This document shows, one piece after another, positions 148 to 14,306 of a DNA stretch of 64,000 bases. Within the stretch, counting starts at the first letter, position 1. The number at the start of each line of letters is the position of its first letter. The stretch spans positions 62,001 through 126,000 of IMG/VR virus record IMGVR_UViG_3300035670_000008. One strand, given 5' to 3'. Position numbers and translations under genes: made by a program. The notes below the pieces were generated by a model. It was not told where the DNA came from, ran no database searches, and saw only the letters and a program-made list of their open reading frames with translations.

Positions 148-1530
148 TCAGTCTCCGCCGGGTTGAGTTGGTTGAATGACTTCACTAGGGAAAAACTCTT
201 CTTTAGGCATGGTTATCTTACAAGTAGTTCTGCCAGATTGTTGCTGCATGTTGGGAGTTGCGGCCGACATCCGTGACGTAGCGGCGCCCAGCTGGTCATA
301 AGAGCAATGGATTCGCCCCGTTGCTACGTTGATATACTTCCGTAAGTCCATACCATCCTGTTTAGTGAGCTTTTTGAACTTTAAGATGGCTTTTACTACC
401 GGGGTTAGTTGTAGCAAGGCGGATTCTTCCAACTCCAGGAACTCGCTGTAGAGTTCAGCCTCTTCTACGTCGACGAATACCTCCTGAGCCGTCTGCTGTC
501 GGTTCTCGGAGGCGGCGAAGATATCTAAGAGTTCGCAGGCTCGGCGTAGACCCTCTGCCTGGGTGGAGTCAAACTTTTCAAGTTTCAACCCAACGTTAAT
601 GAGTTTTAGCAGCTCGGTGCTAGACCGAAGGGTGCTAAGCGCTCGACGTGTGGGTTGTTCTTTACCGTTACCTAAATCAATCGGCTGGTCGAGGTTGAAC
701 TCGTAGCTAAGATAGACTGCGACTTCCTCCATCTCTTGTCTAATTCCTTCCTGGAAGTAACCCATCATCTTCCGGTCGGCTGGCATACCAATGTATTCCA
801 TTTTGGCGATGACGGAGACTAGGCGCATCTCTCTATCTAAGGACTCCTGCATCCCTAGACCCCAATCGTCGCTGTGGTTACCAGTTTGATTCAGGTCGGT
901 ATGCGGCATGGGAGTAACTAACGTCTTAGTTTGTATCTCCCGGATGGGAAACAAATACTGTACGTCGTTAGCCGCGTAGGTTAACTTACCCAACCAGTAT
1001 TCGTTCTCCAGGTTTCTACCGCTTAAGTCTAGCGCCCAGCTACTGACTCGCTCTTCTTTCTTCCCGGTGATACGGACGTTGAGTAGCTCTCGACAGATGT
1101 CAGCGTAGCCGTGACCTAACTGTCTAGCGACTTTAGAACCAGTAGCATTACCGATAAGCTTACTAGCCACAACAACATCAAAGACATTCTTGAACCATAC
1201 TCCAAACTCGTTATATAAGAACTTGAGGTCGAATCTCAGGTTTGCTCCCAGGATTCGGTCGGTCTTTAGTAGTAAATCTCGTAGCGGGGCTCTATCGTAA
1301 TCTAGAGCCCGTAGCCACGCTAAGTCAAAAATAAGGGGCTGCCCTTCCGCCCGCTTGAGGATTAGAAGGCTAATCTCAGCTGTATGGGCGTCTAAAGCAG
1401 ACCCTACGGTTTTATACGTCCCGCGAACGGAAGTCTCTACGTCGAGGGCCAGTGCCGCTGTGGAGCTGCTGAGCATTTCAACAGCGGCTTGGTAGTCCTC
1501 TAGGGTGGTGATGTATTTAAAGGAACTCAT
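148..1530 (-). CDS. polA: Family A DNA polymerase, N-terminal part (3'-5' exonuclease + thumb); catalytic motifs A/B/C absent
   Basis: ExoI LDVETS, ExoII ANLRFDLKFL, ExoIII YAANDV, MEYIGM, GRIHCSYDQLGAATSRMSAATPNMQQ; ORF ends ~30 aa later. Confidence 0.85.
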   Translation of the reverse strand: MSSFKYITTLEDYQAAVEMLSSSTAALALDVETSVRGTYKTVGSALDAHTAEISLLILKRAEGQPLIFDLAWLRALDYDRAPLRDLLLKTDRILGANLRFDLKFLYNEFGVWFKNVFDVVVASKLIGNATGSKVARQLGHGYADICRELLNVRITGKKEERVSSWALDLSGRNLENEYWLGKLTYAANDVQYLFPIREIQTKTLVTPMPHTDLNQTGNHSDDWGLGMQESLDREMRLVSVIAKMEYIGMPADRKMMGYFQEGIRQEMEEVAVYLSYEFNLDQPIDLGNGKEQPTRRALSTLRSSTELLKLINVGLKLEKFDSTQAEGLRRACELLDIFAASENRQQTAQEVFVDVEEAELYSEFLELEESALLQLTPVVKAILKFKKLTKQDGMDLRKYINVATGRIHCSYDQLGAATSRMSAATPNMQQQSGRTTCKITMPKEEFFPSEVIQPTQPGGD

Positions 1531-3780: not shown

Positions 3781-4080
3781 TTAGTTGTAATAGTCAGTTT
3801 CTTTAATGTCGCCTAGCTTTTCAGTGTCGGCGTTGATGCAGCCTGGCTTTTTAGCAAACTGGCATACTCGAGCCCATAGCCGCTCCCTGGTGCCGGATGG
3901 TCCGCAGGAAAACACTACTTTAGCTCCGTCTTCAATCGTTACGCCGCAGGCTGGACAAACTTCTTTACTCAAGGGAAACCTCTTTTTGTGGGTATTGTAG
4001 CTTATCTTGGCTTTCTTTTTGCTTTTTTTCTGTGTTCTCGATTGCTTTTGCCGGGGTTTAGATGCCGAACCGTTCGTCAA
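3781..4080 (-). CDS. Small Cys-rich protein resembling a conserved cyanobacterial hypothetical family
   Basis: CPACGV...VVFSCGPSGTRERLWARVCQFAKKPGCIN; start uncertain. Confidence 0.65.
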   Translation of the reverse strand: MTNGSASKPRQKQSRTQKKSKKKAKISYNTHKKRFPLSKEVCPACGVTIEDGAKVVFSCGPSGTRERLWARVCQFAKKPGCINADTEKLGDIKETDYYN

Positions 4081-4126
4081 GCAATGAACTAATTGTGAAT
4101 TAGATGGCTTCTAACTCAACCCGTAT

Positions 4127-4462
4127 ATGCTTTACCCCGTTCCCTACAGCATCCAGATTATTCGGCGGAGTACCTTTGATTTAATCCTGAAGGTCGAGCT
4201 GGAGCCTAGTGTTCCTTATGATCTTACAGGTAAAACGCTCTTAGCTCAACTATGGGATCGAAAGCGAGAAGAGAAATATACTGACTTTGAGGTTACTGTG
4301 GTTAACGCACCGTTGGGTTCTTTTATGTTAAAGCTCACCTCTGCACAAACACTGCTGTTGCCTACACTCGGTGTCTATGATGTCAAGGTCATCGACGGGG
4401 CTGACGAGTTCTATCTAATCAAAGGAAGCTTTAGCGTTCAAGAGGGCTACACCGATGACTGA
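4127..4462 (+). CDS. Putative virion beta-sandwich (BppU/LtfC-like) protein
   Basis: YDLTG...AQL...LTSAQT..LP..GVYDV...LIKGSF pattern. Confidence 0.55.
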   Translation: MLYPVPYSIQIIRRSTFDLILKVELEPSVPYDLTGKTLLAQLWDRKREEKYTDFEVTVVNAPLGSFMLKLTSAQTLLLPTLGVYDVKVIDGADEFYLIKGSFSVQEGYTDD

Positions 4463-4694
4463 ACCAACGGCGGTAACTCTTAACGTTTCTACCTACGTCA
4501 AACTAGGGCTGGCTGACAAAACTGTGGAGTCTGAGCCGGTTAGCTACTATAGCGCCAACTCAGAGGCCCTTAACGACGGGCTTAGCGTCGGGGACTTTTA
4601 CCTGGACGGCGGCGGCAAACTTCAAGTGGTTCGACCTTTAAATCTATCTTTTAGTTTATCTAACCGGTATAGCCATCTCCTAAGACTTTTTTAA
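4455..4694 (+). CDS. Small hypothetical (putative virion) protein
   Basis: Translationally coupled to upstream ORF. Confidence 0.5.
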   Translation: MTEPTAVTLNVSTYVKLGLADKTVESEPVSYYSANSEALNDGLSVGDFYLDGGGKLQVVRPLNLSFSLSNRYSHLLRLF

Positions 4695-4721
4695 TATTCA
4701 ACTGTATATAGAGGTTTAGGT

Positions 4722-5258
4722 ATGTTCGGACTGATAACGGCCTTGCTCATTTTATTTACTCCTGCACCTGCCGGAGGCAATACTACTCAACAGCCCCACT
4801 GGTGGGACGAACTCTTTAAGACGGAGCTGCTGCTTGGACTAGGTATCCCTTTGGCGTCCGCGATTACGTGGCTAGCACGGGATTACATTAGTAAAGACCA
4901 AGAGGTCGGCAGAGCTAGGTTCAAGAATGAAATTATTACTTCGTTACAGAGTACTTTAGTAGAAGCTGCTAGGGAAAGAGACACTGTGCTGTCGTTAAAG
5001 CTAACGCCTATGCAGAACTCTATCGACCGGCTGGGCGCGGACTACTGCTCCAATCTAACGTTCCATCAAGGTATTGAAGAGAGTATTGACGCGCTCTTCA
5101 AAAACTTCAACGACCTTAACCTGCGGCTCACTGTTATGGAGTCTACCCTTTCCACCACTATGTCTAAGCTTAACTCGGAGCTATCAACGTTACTGACCGC
5201 ATACACTGGTGAGTCTGTCAAGGTTAGGCTCTTTATGGACGACGATAAGCCTAAATAG
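4722..5258 (+). CDS. Membrane-anchored coiled-coil protein (possible lysis accessory)
   Basis: Two N-terminal hydrophobic segments then heptads; GAGG RBS. Confidence 0.55.
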   Translation: MFGLITALLILFTPAPAGGNTTQQPHWWDELFKTELLLGLGIPLASAITWLARDYISKDQEVGRARFKNEIITSLQSTLVEAARERDTVLSLKLTPMQNSIDRLGADYCSNLTFHQGIEESIDALFKNFNDLNLRLTVMESTLSTTMSKLNSELSTLLTAYTGESVKVRLFMDDDKPK

Positions 5259-6393
5259 GTTTGACCGTCAGCCCTACTCTTAAATAATGCTTCTCAATAA
5301 TATGTACCGAGTTTCCTACCCACTGCGCGACAACCGCGGTGGGTACTCCTTTAGCAACCTGATTAGTAATGAAAGTATCCCTGCAGCAATACGGTGTCGT
5401 ACCTACTAGTTTCAACTTCCGCCAGGCTCGGCAGTAGTTGTCGTATCCTATATGCCCGCCTTCTGTGTTAGGGAACAGTAGTTCATTCTCTTTACTAAGT
5501 GAATCCAGAAATGTACTTAGCTCTTCGTAGAGGGGAAATACCCGCCGCTTGTTCGTTTTGCTAGTGTCGGACTGAAACACGTATTTCCCTTTCCGAACGT
5601 AGCTACGTCCTAGGATTAAGTGGTCTTCCTTGACGTCCTCCCAGGTAATACCGGTGGCTTCTGAGGGTCTGCAGCCCACTAGTAGATTAAAGCGGCAGAT
5701 GTTTCGGTAAGCTGAGCCTAGGTTAGCTAACACGAAAGCTACTTCAGTATCAGTTAATGGTCGCGGCTCTTTTTCTGGTTCATTATCGGCGACTTCCTTA
5801 AGCTCTTTAGCCAACTCCCGGTATGGATTGGTTCCTTCGGCTAAGACGCCTCGCTTAATAGCCCAGTCGTACATCGGGGCCATTCGGGACACAACCCGGT
5901 AGGCTTGCTTAATCGTAGTCTCTTTACTAAGTTCCTCCGCCACAACCTTAGCGTTGTAGATATTCTGTTCCTTCAGATTCCGTAGGTTGTAGCCAATGGT
6001 TTCTGTCAGGAAGTGGTAGCTGGAGTCCTTTAGTTTTCCTTTGCGGTCTTCACAATACTGCTGCCACAGTTCCTTCAGCGGAGTCTTTAGACCAACAGTA
6101 CGTTCTAGTTGTTTCCGGTACTGCTCTTTCCGATAGAGGGGGTTGTATTTCTGTAGCGTTGGGTCGAACTCTTCAAAGACGATGTCGTGGTTAATCGTAG
6201 CTACGATTTTAGTTCCTTTAGCAATACCCTCTGCTGTCGCGGCTAACCCCAATGACCAATACTTATCCCTACCTAAGCCTACACAGTCTGGTAGGCGCAC
6301 TCGAAGCATATTCCCCCGGCGGTGTAGCGTAGCCTGCCCTTTAAGCGCTGGGCTGTCAGCTACCTTTCTGCGTTTTTCGCTTGCCATACCCAC
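5251..6393 (-). CDS. int: Tyrosine recombinase/integrase, cyanobacterial type
   Basis: Arm-binding N-terminus (LRVRLP..KYWSLGL..FDPTLQKY), GCRPSEA, SKTNK, PYCCRDTF, VAQWVGNS...HY. Confidence 0.92.
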   Translation of the reverse strand: MGMASEKRRKVADSPALKGQATLHRRGNMLRVRLPDCVGLGRDKYWSLGLAATAEGIAKGTKIVATINHDIVFEEFDPTLQKYNPLYRKEQYRKQLERTVGLKTPLKELWQQYCEDRKGKLKDSSYHFLTETIGYNLRNLKEQNIYNAKVVAEELSKETTIKQAYRVVSRMAPMYDWAIKRGVLAEGTNPYRELAKELKEVADNEPEKEPRPLTDTEVAFVLANLGSAYRNICRFNLLVGCRPSEATGITWEDVKEDHLILGRSYVRKGKYVFQSDTSKTNKRRVFPLYEELSTFLDSLSKENELLFPNTEGGHIGYDNYCRAWRKLKLVGTTPYCCRDTFITNQVAKGVPTAVVAQWVGNSVHIIEKHYLRVGLTVKPI

Positions 6394-6484
6394 TCAACAT
6401 TGTCGTGACGCTCCCTATTATTGCATGACGCGCTGCAGGACACTAAGGTCTGAATTCCTTTGGCAATTCTGAACACCCAAGTAA

Positions 6485-6557
6485 GGGGGTATAGCTCAGT
6501 TGATGAAGCGCCTTCTTTGCAAGCCGGAAGCCAGCGGTTCGAGTCCGCTTACCTCCA
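6485..6557 (+). tRNA. tRNA-Ala(UGC), degenerate in D and anticodon arms; probable attP/pseudo-tRNA
   Basis: Acceptor GGGGGTA/TACCTCC, T arm AGCGG-TTCGAGT-CCGCT, loop TTTGCAA; anticodon stem CCTTC/GCCGG has 2 mismatches; D-loop GG lost; no CCA. Confidence 0.8.
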
Positions 6558-6583
6558 CTAAATTAAAAATCAATATATTGCTG

Positions 6584-7135
6584 CTAGGCGCTGCTTATAT
6601 CGTCTGGTATATGCGCCCAGTTTATATAGTTAACAATGGCATAGATGCCTCCCCTAGAGCCCCCAAATTTGGCTACAAGGTCTCTAACTGTAGCCCCGTC
6701 ATTATACAGCCGGCGCATTTCTTTGATTTGCGCTTCTGTATATCTAGCTATTGGGTTGTTAACTCCCTTTTTGGGATACTCACCTACAGTCTTGTTTCTT
6801 CCTTTCTTAAATGCGTCTCTATTATTATCCCCAACGGTGCCAAGGAATAGATGCTCCGGGTTTACGCAGGCGGGGTTGTCGCAAGTGTGGCAGACACACA
6901 TACTGCCTGGGTCTTGCCGGTATCTTAAAGCATAAGATACCCGGTGGGCTAATAGATACCGGGTTTTGCCGCTACGGTAGTAAGACAACCTGCCGTAGCC
7001 TTTTGCGTTCTTATTCCCCTGCCAAACCCAACAGTCTGTGTCAGGGTTAGGTTCTATTTGTTCCAGCAGCCTAGCCTCTATCTTTTCTACGGCTAGTTCG
7101 ACGTCTTTAATAGTTATTGTTTGAGGTGGGTTCAT
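6584..7135 (-). CDS. Free-standing HNH homing endonuclease
   Basis: CWVWQG..GYG..AHRVSY..CHTCDNPACVNPEHL..GT..DN..D plus C-terminal HTH. Confidence 0.92.
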   Translation of the reverse strand: MNPPQTITIKDVELAVEKIEARLLEQIEPNPDTDCWVWQGNKNAKGYGRLSYYRSGKTRYLLAHRVSYALRYRQDPGSMCVCHTCDNPACVNPEHLFLGTVGDNNRDAFKKGRNKTVGEYPKKGVNNPIARYTEAQIKEMRRLYNDGATVRDLVAKFGGSRGGIYAIVNYINWAHIPDDISSA

Positions 7136-7231
7136 CGTAGGTTAAAAGACGTTTGTATTAACCGATGGGGGCAGAAATATAGGAGTTTGCACGCCGGCTT
7201 GCATGACGGTTCATGAGCCGGCGCAGCTTAC

Positions 7232-8086
7232 TTAGAACAACTTCGGTCGAAGTGTGGTTATTGGGTCAGGAATGAACCCAATAAGGGTAAAATCGCTGGC
7301 TTTGAATTCAGGGGTTTTTAACAATGGGTCGAAACTGCCGCTGAAGTCATAGCGTAGCGTTGGTAATTTCGGTCTGTACCAGCTTGGGGCATTCCAAATT
7401 GCTTTGGCACACTCTATATGACTAGGGTCGTCATAGATATGAGCGTCTCCAAACGTCCAGATTAAGTCACCGACGCTGAGGTCGGCATGGTAGGCAAAAT
7501 ATAGTAACAGCGCCCAGTACTGTACCCAGTTGTGTGGCACCCCTAGGAGCATATCCGCTGACCGCTGGTAGGTATGCATGTGCAGGGTGTTATCTCTTAC
7601 AAAGAACTGAGTAATAGTCCCGTGGCAGGAAGTCGGACATGCAGGGTTCTGGTTGGTCTGAGTAATGTGGTACATGTCATCAGGGTTCCACGTCGTCATA
7701 ACCAACCGACGGCTGTTGGGGTGGCTTAACAGCGCGTCCAGGATGGCCCCGACCTGGTCGAAGTCGTTAGGCCCGTAGTGGCGCATTTGGGTAGCGTAGC
7801 CATCTAAGTAGTTGCCATTTGGGTTGAGCTGACCGTCCCACCAATCCTTCAGGTCGTCCGGGCATTTGGCTTCGCCGGACATGAACCACTCCATCTCTTT
7901 GATAGCTTTCTTCCAAGCGGTACGCCGTAACGTTACCAGTGGGAAGGAAGAGAAAGCAGCTTGTAACCCACAGGTATGGCTGATACAGCTATGGTTCCTG
8001 GTCTCTAAAATCTCCCCGTCATTAAAGACCGTTCTTAGTAGATTCTTATATGTTTGGTCGGCGTCTTCGTAGTATTTAGAGGTCAT
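7232..8086 (-). CDS. thyA: Thymidylate synthase
   Basis: SRRLVMTTWNP, catalytic PTSCH, YQRSADMLLGVPHN, GDAHIY. Confidence 0.95.
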   Translation of the reverse strand: MTSKYYEDADQTYKNLLRTVFNDGEILETRNHSCISHTCGLQAAFSSFPLVTLRRTAWKKAIKEMEWFMSGEAKCPDDLKDWWDGQLNPNGNYLDGYATQMRHYGPNDFDQVGAILDALLSHPNSRRLVMTTWNPDDMYHITQTNQNPACPTSCHGTITQFFVRDNTLHMHTYQRSADMLLGVPHNWVQYWALLLYFAYHADLSVGDLIWTFGDAHIYDDPSHIECAKAIWNAPSWYRPKLPTLRYDFSGSFDPLLKTPEFKASDFTLIGFIPDPITTLRPKLF

Positions 8087-8249
8087 TGGCAGGGCAGTAG
8101 TTTACGAGGTGGGTTTGAACGCTGCGTTGAGTTGGTTGAGCTTGTTGATTCATGTAACCAGTACCGATAGCCCAGACGAACATCAGATAGTGGCTGAAAC
8201 AGCAAGCAAGGATAATATCTTTGATGAGTACTTCGTGTTCAGGTTTCAT
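8076..8249 (-). CDS. Small membrane protein (57 aa, not in ORF track)
   Basis: ATG overlaps upstream TGA, AAGGAGG RBS, hydrophobic IILACCFSHYLMFVWAIG; stop overlaps thyA start. Confidence 0.6.
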   Translation of the reverse strand: MKPEHEVLIKDIILACCFSHYLMFVWAIGTGYMNQQAQPTQRSVQTHLVNYCPANDL

Positions 8250-9253
8250 GGGTTCCTCCTTTTGTTTCTAACGTCTATGGATTCTAACTCTGCAATTAAT
8301 TCTCGTAGAGGAATATCCCCTACATTTTCCCAAACTTGGTTGAGCGCTCGGAGGTCGTTCTTAGTCAGACCTTTTACCAACTTGCCGTCTACTTCAACAG
8401 CAGGAAGTCCTAGCGGGTTGCTAGTGCCGACAGCGCTAATGATGTCTTCCATTACGGCTTCTAAAGCCCGGTCGTCTAGGTCTTTTCGTTGACCGCTACA
8501 AGCGTAGTCTAATACTGCGTCCTGATATTGCGGAGCTACCGTGGCTTTAAACAGGTAGGCACTGAACTCATTGTCGTCTTCTTCTAGCATGGGGAACTTC
8601 TTGATAGTCCCCTCTAATAAGTACCAGAGGTAGTCAGAGGCTGATTTCCAGTCGCTAACTTCGCAGTACATATCCATGCGGTCTTTAACCACTTCAATCA
8701 TCCGGCCAAAGTAGCCAGGAACGCCGACGTTCTCTTCTATACCCGGTAGACTCCACTGCTTGGTGACGCTGGCTGCCTTTAAGAACTCGAAGGCTTCCTC
8801 TGGCATATTCTGCTCGACGACATCCATCGCTCTGTCTGATATATATACGCCTTTGTCCTCAAAACTGAAGTCCTCGCCAAGCACTAGGCCGAGTTCAGTG
8901 AAGTATTTGAAAGTGGTGTCTTTAGCTACGTCCGATAACGTCACCTCTGCACCTGACCGTTCCATCTCTTCATTAAGGGTTTCCCAGTAGAAGCAGATGT
9001 CTCCTAGGTTTAGCTCCCAACTAGTGTTGAGTTGGATACACTCTACTAGAATCTGAGCGCAACGGTCTTCTCCTAGCTGCTCGTAACCCTCAAAGATAGC
9101 AGCTATAACAGACTCTGGACGTCTTGCTTTAACAGCACTGCAGACATTAGTTTGAAAGTTCTCTTCTGTATACATGGTCATCTTGTAATTGGTACCCTGC
9201 CCTTCTTCTAGCTTAGCTAAGGAGTCGATAGACGAACTGTTCGCCAAGTGCAA
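8246..9253 (-). CDS. Acidic hypothetical protein (true start probably ~9180)
   Basis: Long ORF in operon. Confidence 0.7.
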   Translation of the reverse strand: MHLANSSSIDSLAKLEEGQGTNYKMTMYTEENFQTNVCSAVKARRPESVIAAIFEGYEQLGEDRCAQILVECIQLNTSWELNLGDICFYWETLNEEMERSGAEVTLSDVAKDTTFKYFTELGLVLGEDFSFEDKGVYISDRAMDVVEQNMPEEAFEFLKAASVTKQWSLPGIEENVGVPGYFGRMIEVVKDRMDMYCEVSDWKSASDYLWYLLEGTIKKFPMLEEDDNEFSAYLFKATVAPQYQDAVLDYACSGQRKDLDDRALEAVMEDIISAVGTSNPLGLPAVEVDGKLVKGLTKNDLRALNQVWENVGDIPLRELIAELESIDVRNKRRNP

Positions 9254-13716: not shown

Positions 13717-13979
13717 TGACTGAGTCTATTGCGGAGACGACTACAGCCGTCGGGCTCAAGTTGGCTATGCTAGGGGACTTTGATGACGACCCCTCAGCGG
13801 ATACGCTGCTGGAGTTTGGCGATAAGTATAATTTCAATATGAAAATGCTTGACCAAACAGTTAATCAAGCTCGTAACGCCTTTGAGAATATGGAACAGGT
13901 CGAACGCGCGGGCGTTCTTAAAGGAGTGTTATACGGTGGAAAGCTTGGGGTCTATGATATAGCTTTACCATCGGCATGA
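13716..13979 (+). CDS. Hypothetical protein
   Basis: Coupled ORF. Confidence 0.55.
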   Translation: MTESIAETTTAVGLKLAMLGDFDDDPSADTLLEFGDKYNFNMKMLDQTVNQARNAFENMEQVERAGVLKGVLYGGKLGVYDIALPSA

Positions 13980-14306
13980 GTCCATTAGTAGCTGCTTAAC
14001 CGAGTTATCCCGAGTCATGATTTGACTCATGGTTTCAAGCAGCCGGTTAATAATCTCAGCTTTGGATTCTTGTCTTAACTCCTCCTCCATCATTCGACAA
14101 CGCAGGCTCTGCTCGAGGGTTAGGTCGAACTCCTCCCCTATCAGCTTCTTGTTTTTAGCCAAGCTCAGGTAGAGATTGGTCTTGATGGACAGCTGCCTGG
14201 TGGCGTCCACCAGTAACTCTAATAGCTGCATCTTTTCTAGGTTTTCAGCAGCTTGTTTCATTTGAAGATATTGAAACTGCTGCTCCAAAGTTAACTGGGG
14301 TGACAT
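13965..14306 (-). CDS. nblA: Phycobilisome degradation protein NblA, two domains fused in tandem
   Basis: Repeat 1 LTLEQQF...RQLSIKTN; repeat 2 LTLEQSL...SQIMTRDNSVKQLL. Confidence 0.85.
   Translation of the reverse strand: MSPQLTLEQQFQYLQMKQAAENLEKMQLLELLVDATRQLSIKTNLYLSLAKNKKLIGEEFDLTLEQSLRCRMMEEELRQESKAEIINRLLETMSQIMTRDNSVKQLLMDSCRW

What the first reader, a model, noticed from the sequence alone, without database searches (positions are those of the whole stretch)
5251..6557. Integrase plus full-length but damaged tRNA-Ala(UGC): possible integration into the host rRNA operon spacer
Seen: perfect T arm and acceptor stem but broken D loop and anticodon stem, 92 bp from the integrase start, as expected for an attP. 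Known: cyanobacterial tRNA-Ala(UGC) usually lies in the 16S-23S spacer. Inference: a very large, replication-autonomous phage may lysogenise at an rrn operon.
Basis: partly seen in the sequence, partly recalled or inferred. Interest (0 to 1): 0.62.

Follow-up and report, generated by a model that had tools for sequence, protein, structure and literature searches.

The report
Integrase with tRNA-Ala-derived attachment site
A 216-kb virus of cyanobacteria carries a well-conserved integrase next to a partly scrambled copy of the host's alanine tRNA gene, most likely the docking site it uses to insert into that host gene, but nothing shows that the target lies inside a ribosomal RNA operon.

Summary
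Window 6485-6557(+) is a full-length tRNA-Ala(UGC)-like sequence, called by ARAGORN and scoring 46.9 bits in Rfam against 72-75 bits for host copies. It lies 92-97 nt from the start of a 378/380-aa tyrosine integrase (5251-6387/6393, minus strand) and points away from it. It matches the commonest cyanobacterial tRNA-Ala at 66 of 73 positions. All 7 changes fall in positions 19-47 and break 3 of 21 cloverleaf pairs plus G19 and A21.

Comparison supports an attachment site (attP). Every relative of the integrase at 41-89% identity that has upstream DNA carries a tRNA-derived piece at the same place and in the same orientation. The pieces are Val(UAC) whole, 5' half or 3' half; Ala(UGC) 3' half twice; and Pro(UGG) 3' half. 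More distant relatives sit beside tRNA genes in cyanobacterial chromosomes. The integrase is under strong purifying selection (dN/dS about 0.05).

The rRNA-operon inference is not established:
- Many cyanobacteria have a stand-alone tRNA-Ala(UGC) gene.
- The two integrated elements I could see use that stand-alone locus.
- None of 102 spacer copies examined is interrupted.

Verdict: a new member of a known kind (a tRNA-targeting integrase and its attP), in an unusually large cyanophage.

The parts
5251..6393 (-). Tyrosine integrase gene. It is 380 aa from the GTG at 6393; the public protein P0001 is 378 aa from the ATG at 6387.
   Evidence: PF00589 E 2e-8; phrog_1 integrase E 2e-32. Arg242, Arg338 and Tyr370 are invariant in the clade. 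dN/dS is 0.05 against the 88%- and 75%-identical orthologues in L124 and L125.
6388..6484 (.). Spacer between the integrase and the tRNA: the candidate P arm and the integrase promoter region.
   Evidence: The motif at 6415-6430 is conserved in L124 and L125 even though synonymous sites are saturated. There is one weak sigma-70-like match at 6394-6421(+), no more than chance predicts. No arm-type repeats were found above shuffle level.
6485..6557 (+). Full-length tRNA-Ala(UGC)-like sequence, internally degenerate: the proposed attP core region.
   Evidence: ARAGORN; Rfam 46.9 bits; 66 of 73 identical to host tRNA-Ala, with all changes at positions 19-47.
6511..6527 (+). Anticodon stem-loop (tRNA positions 27-43), the proposed crossover region. 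Positions 31-40 (6515-6524) are the 10-nt block identical to the host around the loop.
   Evidence: This is the only tRNA segment shared by all eight clade members. The 3'-half relatives begin exactly at the 5' strand of this stem. The 114-nt direct repeat of the L159 islet also starts there.
6584..7135 (-). HNH (His-Me finger) endonuclease gene abutting the 3' side of the tRNA-like element.
   Evidence: PF13392 and PF05551 just below cut-off; phrog_59 E 2e-29. An HNH gene occupies the same position in L124, L125, L131 and L163.

Best explanation
The tRNA-Ala-like element at 6485-6557 is the attachment site (attP), or a very recent derivative of one, of the divergently transcribed tyrosine integrase.

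Proposed mechanism (inferred, not shown): the integrase exchanges strands in or next to the 7-nt anticodon loop, between the phage copy and a host tRNA-Ala(UGC) gene. This is the pattern of anticodon-loop tRNA integrases. Crossover in the loop would give two junctions:
- attL: the host 5' part plus the phage 3' part, an almost normal tRNA-Ala.
- attR: the more damaged phage 5' part plus the host 3' part, next to the integrase.

The phage copy itself is probably a poor tRNA or not a working one.

The host gene could be the copy in the 16S-23S spacer or, where present, a stand-alone tRNA-Ala(UGC) gene; the sequence cannot distinguish them. Whether integration leads to stable lysogeny, or is transient as in T7-like cyanophages, is unknown.
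For: 1. Positional coupling across relatives, while the tRNA identity changes. In each case the piece lies 65-150 nt from the integrase start, on the opposite strand.
- L124 (89% identity): whole Val(UAC), 68 bits.
- L125 (76%): Val(UAC) positions 1-41 only.
- L131 (41%): whole Val(UAC), 70 bits.
- L129 (45%): Val 3' half, 46 of 47 identical to host.
- L163 (44%) and L164 (41%): Ala(UGC) 3' half. Its 38-mer occurs exactly in 98 cyanobacterial loci.
- L130 (44%): Pro(UGG) 3' half.

2. The wider family (27-36% identity) flanks tRNA genes in cyanobacterial chromosomes and metagenome contigs. In L159 (Oscillatoria) a 2.8-kb islet is bounded by a 114-nt direct repeat that starts at the anticodon stem of tRNA-Pro.

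3. The integrase is functional by evolutionary criteria. dN/dS is 0.05 with saturated synonymous sites, and it is more conserved (88% and 75%) than ThyA (72% and 58%) or RecA (64%) in the same genomes.

4. The predicted attL hybrid keeps 20 of 21 cloverleaf pairs at -28.0 kcal/mol (host -29.4), whereas the phage copy keeps 18 of 21 at -20.7. The 3' half that would be donated is therefore the better-preserved half.

5. tRNA-Ala(UGC) is a real integration target in cyanobacteria. MAGs G406 and G407 each hold one full gene plus one 100%-identical displaced fragment (positions 28/29-73). In G406 the fragment lies beside an integrase; in G407 an integrase-like ORF follows the full gene.

6. Published precedents show that imperfect cores work. 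One mycobacteriophage uses a 43-bp core with 5 mismatches and another a 10-bp core (PMC10865867). In Anabaena tRNA-Cys, both 38-bp 5' and 45-bp 3' duplications around the anticodon loop are seen (bioRxiv 10.64898/2025.12.09.693284).
Against: - No integrated copy, attL or attR was found. All 6 contigs with the identical integrase show the free-phage neighbourhood. No integrase closer than 36% identity comes from a named cyanobacterial genome among 84 hits. The best HMM hit in 401 cyanobacterial genomes scores 297 bits.
- No arm-type repeats exceed shuffle level around the element, and the would-be P' arm lies inside the HNH gene.
- The phage anticodon stem differs from every sampled host. The best identity is 90% in 401 genomes, and no genome holds the phage 3' half.
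- The core sequences of the three large-phage relatives are unlike one another, although their integrases are 76-89% identical.
- Full-length host-like tRNA-Ala(UGC) genes are common in viral contigs without any such integrase: 120 of 120 loci examined. A plain phage tRNA origin therefore has a high prior.
Confidence: 0.6

Rival explanations
1. It is simply a phage-borne tRNA-Ala(UGC) gene of the kind many cyanophages carry. It either still works despite odd features or is decaying, and its adjacency to the integrase is inherited gene order with no role in recombination.
For: More than 120 IMG/VR contigs carry full-length host-like tRNA-Ala(UGC), and none has an integrase of this family in the fetched DNA. 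The element passes ARAGORN and the Rfam threshold. The genome has two other tRNAs. L124 and L131 carry well-formed tRNA-Val at the same place. HNH homing endonucleases often accompany phage tRNA genes (general knowledge).
Against: Inherited gene order cannot explain why the tRNA identity changes (Val, Ala, Pro) while the position stays fixed. It also cannot explain why five relatives keep only a half tRNA that ends at the anticodon stem-loop. None of the three stem changes in the window copy is compensated, and G19 and A21 are lost.
Confidence: 0.22
2. It is a fossil. An ancestor integrated at tRNA-Ala and captured the whole gene by imprecise excision or gene conversion. The phage no longer integrates, and the conserved integrase now does another job, such as circularising the genome or resolving dimers at a different site.
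For: No lysogens or junctions were found. No arm-type repeats were found. The cores of closely related integrases are dissimilar. The flanks (positions 1-18 and 48-73) are identical to the host while the middle has 7 changes in 29 nt, a mosaic that suggests recent capture followed by local change.
Against: Strong purifying selection acts on the integrase. A tRNA piece persists at the same spot in eight lineages despite saturated neutral divergence. No second repeat or alternative site was seen in the 216-kb genome.
Confidence: 0.12
3. It is a tRNA-like RNA with a non-decoding role. Only the acceptor/T-arm minihelix is kept, for example as a substrate or decoy for AlaRS, RNase P, the CCA-adding enzyme or a host tRNA-cleaving defence.
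For: The acceptor stem (with G3:U70) and T arm show 0 changes in 44 nt, while the D and anticodon arms show 7 changes in 29 nt.
Against: There is no comparative support. Relatives keep different halves, including a 5' half with no T arm in L125. Expression could not be tested.
Confidence: 0.05

Closest known systems
Anticodon-loop tRNA integrases (Williams 2002 sublocation scheme, as cited in bioRxiv 10.64898/2025.12.09.693284), for example the 37-kb and 10-kb elements at tRNA-Cys of Anabaena variabilis
   Same: A tyrosine integrase sits next to a tRNA-derived att site. In relatives the identity block starts at the anticodon stem. Both 5'-side and 3'-side tRNA pieces occur, as in Anabaena (38-bp and 45-bp duplications). 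The hosts are cyanobacteria.
   Different: Here the phage holds a full-length copy with 7 internal changes. The carrier is a 216-kb phage rather than a small island. No integrated state was seen.
T7-like cyanophages (P-SSP7, S-TIP37) with an integrase and an attP matching a host tRNA gene (PMC8776855)
   Same: A cyanophage with lytic-type replication genes carries an integrase and a tRNA-matching site. That paper shows that integration can occur without stable lysogeny.
   Different: The phage lineage and size differ. The integrase is only distantly related. The site here is a whole, degenerate tRNA copy lying upstream of the integrase and pointing away from it.
Mycobacteriophages Boilgate and Fionnbharth, tRNA-dependent lysogeny (PMC10865867)
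   Same: The attP overlaps a tRNA sequence with mismatches: a 43-bp core with 5 differences in one phage and only a 10-bp core in the other. The window has a 10-nt perfect block around the loop.
   Different: Those phages carry a separate, intact tRNA of the same isotype to complement the host gene. Here the only Ala tRNA is the degenerate att-like copy itself.
Mycobacteriophage Ms6, attB in the T-loop of tRNA-Ala (PMC1762012)
   Same: tRNA-Ala is the integration target of a phage tyrosine integrase.
   Different: Ms6 crosses over in the T-loop at the 3' end. The comparative data here point to the anticodon stem-loop, although a T-loop crossover cannot be excluded for the window itself.

Membership tests
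Tyrosine recombinase / phage integrase (PF00589) | Catalytic domain match above the family threshold | tested here: met
   PF00589 34.6 bits against a cut-off of 27.1, E 2e-8; phrog_1 integrase E 2e-32.
Tyrosine recombinase / phage integrase (PF00589) | Catalytic residues Arg-Lys-His-Arg-His/Trp-Tyr | tested here: inconclusive
   Arg242, Arg338 and Tyr370 are invariant in the clade. The His of the HxxR motif is Cys, Ala or Gly, and the second His is an invariant Asn. Such substitutions are known in active recombinases (own knowledge), but activity was not tested.
Lambda-type integrase with an arm-binding N-terminal domain (PF12167) | [quoted passage not shown] | tested here: inconclusive
   There is no Pfam hit for the window's first 110 residues. 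Relative P0006 gives PF12167 at E 0.01. Many homologues that align over 87-97% of the query carry PF12167.
Lambda-type integrase with an arm-binding N-terminal domain (PF12167) | Repeated arm-type sites flanking the attP core | tested here: not met
   No repeat exceeds shuffle level in 6380-6760. Short TTTAATACCA-type repeats are present in the chromosomal relative L159.
tRNA-gene-targeting integration module (attP containing tRNA sequence) | tRNA-derived sequence adjacent to the integrase, conserved in position across relatives | tested here: met
   All eight clade members (the window plus seven relatives) with upstream DNA carry such a piece.
tRNA-gene-targeting integration module (attP containing tRNA sequence) | Uninterrupted identity block with the host tRNA from the crossover point to the 3' end | tested here: inconclusive
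   In the window, positions 48-73 are identical and positions 31-40 are identical, but 41, 45 and 47 differ from the commonest host form. No genome holds the exact phage 3' half. The feature is met in relatives L129, L163 and L164.
tRNA-gene-targeting integration module (attP containing tRNA sequence) | Integrated state with attL and attR (a full tRNA plus a displaced fragment) | tested here: not met
   Not found for this phage or its close clade. Found only for distant relatives: L159, G406 and G407.
Bona fide tRNA gene | Cloverleaf with intact stems and conserved G18-G19 and A21 | tested here: not met
   18 of 21 pairs, with G19A and A21G. The score is 46.9 bits against 72-75 bits for host copies. 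It still passes the ARAGORN and Rfam thresholds, so function is not excluded.
tRNA-dependent lysogeny (PMC10865867) | A separate intact phage tRNA of the same isotype that complements a disrupted host gene | tested here: not met
   The genome has only tRNA-Met, tRNA-Trp and this Ala-like copy.
Integration into the rrn operon spacer | The target tRNA-Ala(UGC) lies only in the 16S-23S spacer of the host | tested here: inconclusive
   102 of 122 sites with the 3' 26-mer are in the spacer and 7 of 7 loci by Rfam. Stand-alone copies of the same sequence exist, and 8 of 12 sites with the L163/L164 46-mer are stand-alone. The host is unknown.

The most novel reading that the evidence does not exclude
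A jumbo (216-kb) cyanophage with its own replication genes integrates into the tRNA-Ala(UGC) gene inside a host 16S-23S spacer. This would split an rRNA operon, with the phage-supplied tRNA halves keeping the spacer's processing signals intact.
Probability: 0.1. Interest if true: 0.75.

Novelty: new member of a known kind. Interest (0 to 1): 0.4.

Why it matters
Temperate or integrating cyanophages are poorly documented, and very large phages are usually treated as strictly lytic. This lineage of large freshwater-type cyanophages (they carry NblA) keeps an integrase more strictly conserved than its RecA or ThyA, next to a tRNA-derived site. That argues integration is part of their biology.

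The clade also gives a clean natural series for studying how attachment sites evolve. The sites are whole, 5'-half, 3'-half and internally degenerate tRNA copies, and the target switches among Val, Ala and Pro tRNAs, most of which share a CTGC/GCAG anticodon stem.

If the target were the spacer tRNA-Ala, a 216-kb insertion would separate 16S from 23S rRNA, which would be unusual. Present evidence does not favour that over a stand-alone tRNA-Ala gene.

Tried and rejected
- **Host with the phage's own 3' half.** A pattern allowing any bases at positions 40, 41 and 47 gave 0 hits in genome contigs.
- **The degenerate middle in other viruses.** An exact 31-mer gave 0 hits in viral contigs.
- **Relatives of the integrase in viral contigs.** None, with either the single protein or the clade alignment.
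- **Megablast of window 4000-9000 against isolated phages.** No match. The closest isolated-phage integrases are cyanophage ones at 29% identity or less.
- **Near-identical host for the tRNA-Val of L124.** None at E <= 1e-24 in 401 cyanobacterial genomes, so this is uninformative.
- **A small integrase islet inserted into a phage tRNA gene.** Rejected: no second copy or fragment of the tRNA exists anywhere in the 216-kb genome.
- **Arm-type repeats.** None above shuffle level.
- **Promoter and terminator scan.** One weak match, as chance predicts.
- **Literature.** No paper was found describing integration into a spacer tRNA-Ala. The Haloquadratum prophage in tRNA-Ala is not stated to lie in an rRNA operon.
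- **Not used.** The large representative protein search, structure prediction and complex prediction were not needed for the question.
Full report
**What is there.** The window is bases 62001-126000 of a 216,563-bp IMG/VR virus record, linear and 96% complete by CheckV. ARAGORN finds one tRNA in the window, tRNA-Ala(tgc) at 6485-6558(+). Rfam's tRNA model matches 6485-6557 at 46.9 bits (gathering score 29) and flags non-standard pairs at 13-22, 29-41 and 30-40. ORF 5251-6393(-) is a tyrosine recombinase: PF00589 E 2e-8 and phrog_1 'integrase' E 2e-32. The public protein starts at the ATG at 6387 and is 378 aa. The two features point away from each other, 92-97 nt apart. On the other side of the tRNA lie an HNH endonuclease (6584-7135, minus strand) and thymidylate synthase. 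RecA and an N-terminal DNA polymerase A ORF lie beyond the integrase. The genome encodes NblA at 13965-14306(-) (PF04485 E 4e-19), which points to a phycobilisome-bearing cyanobacterial host.

**How damaged is the tRNA.** The 26-nt T arm plus acceptor 3' strand occurs exactly in more than 120 cyanobacterial loci. The best host tRNA-Ala(UGC) is 66 of 73 identical. A BLAST over 401 cyanobacterial genomes found nothing better than 90%. The seven differences are G19A, A21G, G22A, G30U, A41C, U45A and U47C. All lie in positions 19-47, with none in the 44 flanking positions; p is about 0.001, with the window chosen post hoc. Three of the changes break cloverleaf pairs and none is compensated. Two hit the conserved G19 and A21. 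The cloverleaf energy falls from -29.4 to -20.7 kcal/mol, and the minimum-energy fold is no longer a cloverleaf. Host copies score 72-75 bits. The element is therefore recognisable as a tRNA gene but is unlikely to be under selection as a decoding tRNA.

**Comparative evidence.** The word-index protein search gave 84 homologues.

- The three closest (100%, 89% and 76% identity) come from large phage-like contigs with the same gene order: thyA, HNH, tRNA-like element, integrase, then recA further on.
- A second tier at 41-45% comes from short metagenome contigs.
- The rest, at 27-36%, are cyanobacterial chromosomal or metagenomic integrases, many with the PF12167 arm-binding domain.

Every one of the eight clade members (the window plus seven relatives) that has readable DNA upstream of the integrase carries a tRNA-derived piece 65-150 nt from the start codon, on the opposite strand:

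| Locus | Integrase identity | tRNA piece |
|---|---|---|
| window | 100% | Ala(UGC), whole but degenerate |
| L124 | 89% | Val(UAC), whole, 68 bits, only base 1 mismatched |
| L125 | 76% | Val(UAC), positions 1-41 only |
| L131 | 41% | Val(UAC), whole, 70 bits |
| L129 | 45% | Val(UAC) 3' half, 46 of 47 identical to Arthrospira and Calothrix tRNA-Val from about position 28 |
| L163 | 44% | Ala(UGC) 3' half; 38 nt found exactly in 98 cyanobacterial loci |
| L164 | 41% | Ala(UGC) 3' half, same 38 nt |
| L130 | 44% | Pro(UGG) 3' half, at the contig end |

The only segment common to all eight is the anticodon stem-loop. The four 3'-half pieces begin exactly at its 5' strand and share a CTGC/GCAG stem.

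Among the distant relatives, ARAGORN finds an intact tRNA gene immediately beside the integrase in most loci with enough flank: Gly, Val, Thr, Phe, Lys, Met, Pro or Arg. In Oscillatoria sp. FACHB-1406 (L159) a 2.8-kb islet is bounded by a 114-nt direct repeat at 98% identity. That repeat starts at the anticodon stem of tRNA-Pro and ends 66 nt past the gene.

This is the signature of tRNA-targeting integrases that cross over at the anticodon loop. The Anabaena tRNA-Cys paper describes both 38-bp 5' and 45-bp 3' duplications around that loop (bioRxiv 10.64898/2025.12.09.693284).

**Is the integrase alive.** Against the L124 and L125 orthologues, dN/dS is 0.05-0.08 with saturated synonymous sites. 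The protein is better conserved (88% and 75%) than ThyA (72% and 58%), RecA (64%) or the HNH (48-60%) of the same genomes. Arg242, Arg338 and Tyr370 are invariant. The two catalytic histidines are replaced, by Cys/Ala/Gly and by Asn, throughout the clade, so activity is inferred and not shown. At this level of divergence a neutral tRNA relic would be unrecognisable. Yet a tRNA piece persists at the same place and has changed identity, which argues for functional coupling rather than inherited gene order.

**Proposed mechanism (inferred).** Strand exchange in the 7-nt anticodon loop, which is identical to the host within a perfect 10-nt block at positions 31-40, would give two junctions:

- attL: host positions 1-34 plus phage 35-73, keeping 20 of 21 pairs at -28.0 kcal/mol.
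- attR: phage 1-34 plus host 35-73, keeping 19 of 21 pairs at -23.6 kcal/mol, next to the integrase.

The half the phage would donate to the regenerated gene is therefore the better-preserved half. Imperfect cores are known to work: mycobacteriophage Boilgate uses a 43-bp core with five mismatches and Fionnbharth a 10-bp core (PMC10865867). A T-loop crossover, as in Ms6 (PMC1762012), cannot be excluded for the window itself, because positions 48-73 are perfect.

**Weak points.**

- No arm-type repeats exceed shuffle level around the element.
- The would-be P' arm lies in the HNH gene.
- The anticodon stems of the window, L124 and L125 are unlike each other although the integrases are 76-89% identical.
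- No genome holds the phage's own 3' half.

**The rRNA-operon claim.** In 7 of 7 loci checked with Rfam the best-matching tRNA-Ala(UGC) lies between 16S/tRNA-Ile and 23S. Of the 122 sites with the 26-mer, 102 have 23S a median of 258 nt downstream. That sample is dominated by Prochlorococcus, however.

Eleven sites are not in an rrn operon.

- Five of them (L028, L030, L034, L056, L060) are full-length genes of identical sequence.
- Four of these five, plus loci L253-L256, share a conserved upstream rhodanese/UPF0176-type gene, which marks a stand-alone locus; L056 had too little upstream DNA to compare.
- Of the 12 genomic sites, in 9 of 401 genomes, that carry the exact 46-nt piece of L163 and L164, 8 are stand-alone and 4 are in spacers.

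Two MAGs show actual integration into tRNA-Ala(UGC).

- G406 (binned as Spirulina) has one full gene at the stand-alone locus plus a 100%-identical fragment (positions 28-73). The fragment lies 150 nt downstream of a 405-aa integrase that is 25% identical to the window's.
- G407 has the full gene followed 177 nt later by a 369-aa ORF with a weak PF00589 match, and a displaced fragment (positions 29-73) on another contig.

None of the 102 spacer copies is interrupted. The spacer target is therefore possible but not favoured.

**Lysogeny.** No integrated form was found. All six contigs carrying the identical integrase have the free-phage neighbours. No clade member comes from an isolate genome. 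The best hit in 401 cyanobacterial genomes is a distant relative at 297 bits. T7-like cyanophages integrate at low frequency without forming lysogens (PMC8776855), and that outcome is equally open here.

**Rivals.**

- *Plain phage tRNA.* This has a real prior. More than 120 IMG/VR contigs carry full-length, host-like tRNA-Ala(UGC), and none has an integrase of this family in the fetched DNA. It does not explain the half-tRNAs or the identity switches at a fixed position beside the integrase.
- *Mini-islet inserted into a phage tRNA.* Rejected, because there is no second copy or fragment in the genome.
- *Fossil site with a re-purposed integrase.* Cannot be excluded.
- *Acceptor/T-arm minihelix RNA with a non-decoding role.* Cannot be excluded.

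**Verdict.** The attP reading is supported by comparative evidence, at a confidence of about 0.6. The rrn-operon and lysogeny inferences are not established. The kind of system, a tRNA-targeting tyrosine integrase with its attP, is well known. The new points are the carrier (a 216-kb cyanophage lineage with no close isolated relative), the full-length but internally degenerate site, and the series of target and site-architecture changes within one integrase clade.

Noticed in passing
window 13965-14306 (-): The phage encodes an NblA phycobilisome-degradation protein (PF04485 E 4e-19). Relative L125 has one too, at 274-609. This ties the lineage to phycobilisome-bearing cyanobacteria.
   Followed up: partly
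window 6584-7135 (-); L124 5218-5871; L125 5295-5822; L131 869-1267; L163 532-1059: An HNH (His-Me finger) endonuclease gene abuts the 3' side of the tRNA-derived piece in five clade members whose integrases are only 41-89% identical. It may be a homing endonuclease that drives replacement of the tRNA segment, or a partner of the integration module.
   Followed up: partly
window 6415-6430: A 16-nt motif (CTATTATTGCATGACG in the window) between the integrase start and the tRNA is conserved in L124 and L125 despite saturated synonymous divergence. It could be an integrase operator, promoter or arm site.
   Followed up: no
window 148-1530 (-); L125 from 13128: A 460-aa ORF carries the DNA polymerase A 3'-5' exonuclease domain and only the first part of the polymerase domain, so the polymerase may be split. 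The orthologue in L125 has precomputed intein and Hint domain hits.
   Followed up: no
G000:C1:207478-207625 (L001 1421-1571): The genome's two other tRNAs, Met(CAT) and Trp(CCA), are adjacent and well formed (54 and 66 bits). ARAGORN also calls a 'tmRNA*' that overlaps them, which looks like a false positive.
   Followed up: no
L028, L030, L034, L060, L253-L256: Several cyanobacteria have a stand-alone tRNA-Ala(UGC) gene, identical in sequence to the spacer copy. It lies at a conserved locus next to a divergently oriented rhodanese/UPF0176-type gene.
   Followed up: partly
L051/L257 (G406) and L046/L258 plus L253 (G407): Two cyanobacterial MAGs each hold a full tRNA-Ala(UGC) plus a 100%-identical displaced 3' fragment (positions 28/29-73). 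In G406 the fragment lies beside an integrase with ParB; in G407 the integrase-like ORF follows the full gene, and the fragment's contig carries a Cro/C1-type HTH gene. These look like elements integrated at the stand-alone gene.
   Followed up: partly
L159 3759-3872 and 6556-6669: In Oscillatoria sp. FACHB-1406, a 2.8-kb islet (an integrase plus one small gene) is bounded by a 114-nt direct repeat running from the tRNA-Pro(UGG) anticodon stem to 66 nt past the gene. TTTAATACCA-type repeats lie near both ends.
   Followed up: partly
L265-L384 (IMG/VR contigs): More than 120 viral contigs carry a full-length tRNA-Ala(UGC) that shares an exact 38-mer with cyanobacterial tRNA-Ala. None has an integrase of this family or rRNA in the fetched flanks.
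   Followed up: partly
alignment A2 (integrase clade): The whole clade lacks both canonical catalytic histidines: the HxxR His is Cys, Ala or Gly, and the second His is an invariant Asn. Both arginines and the tyrosine are kept.
   Followed up: no
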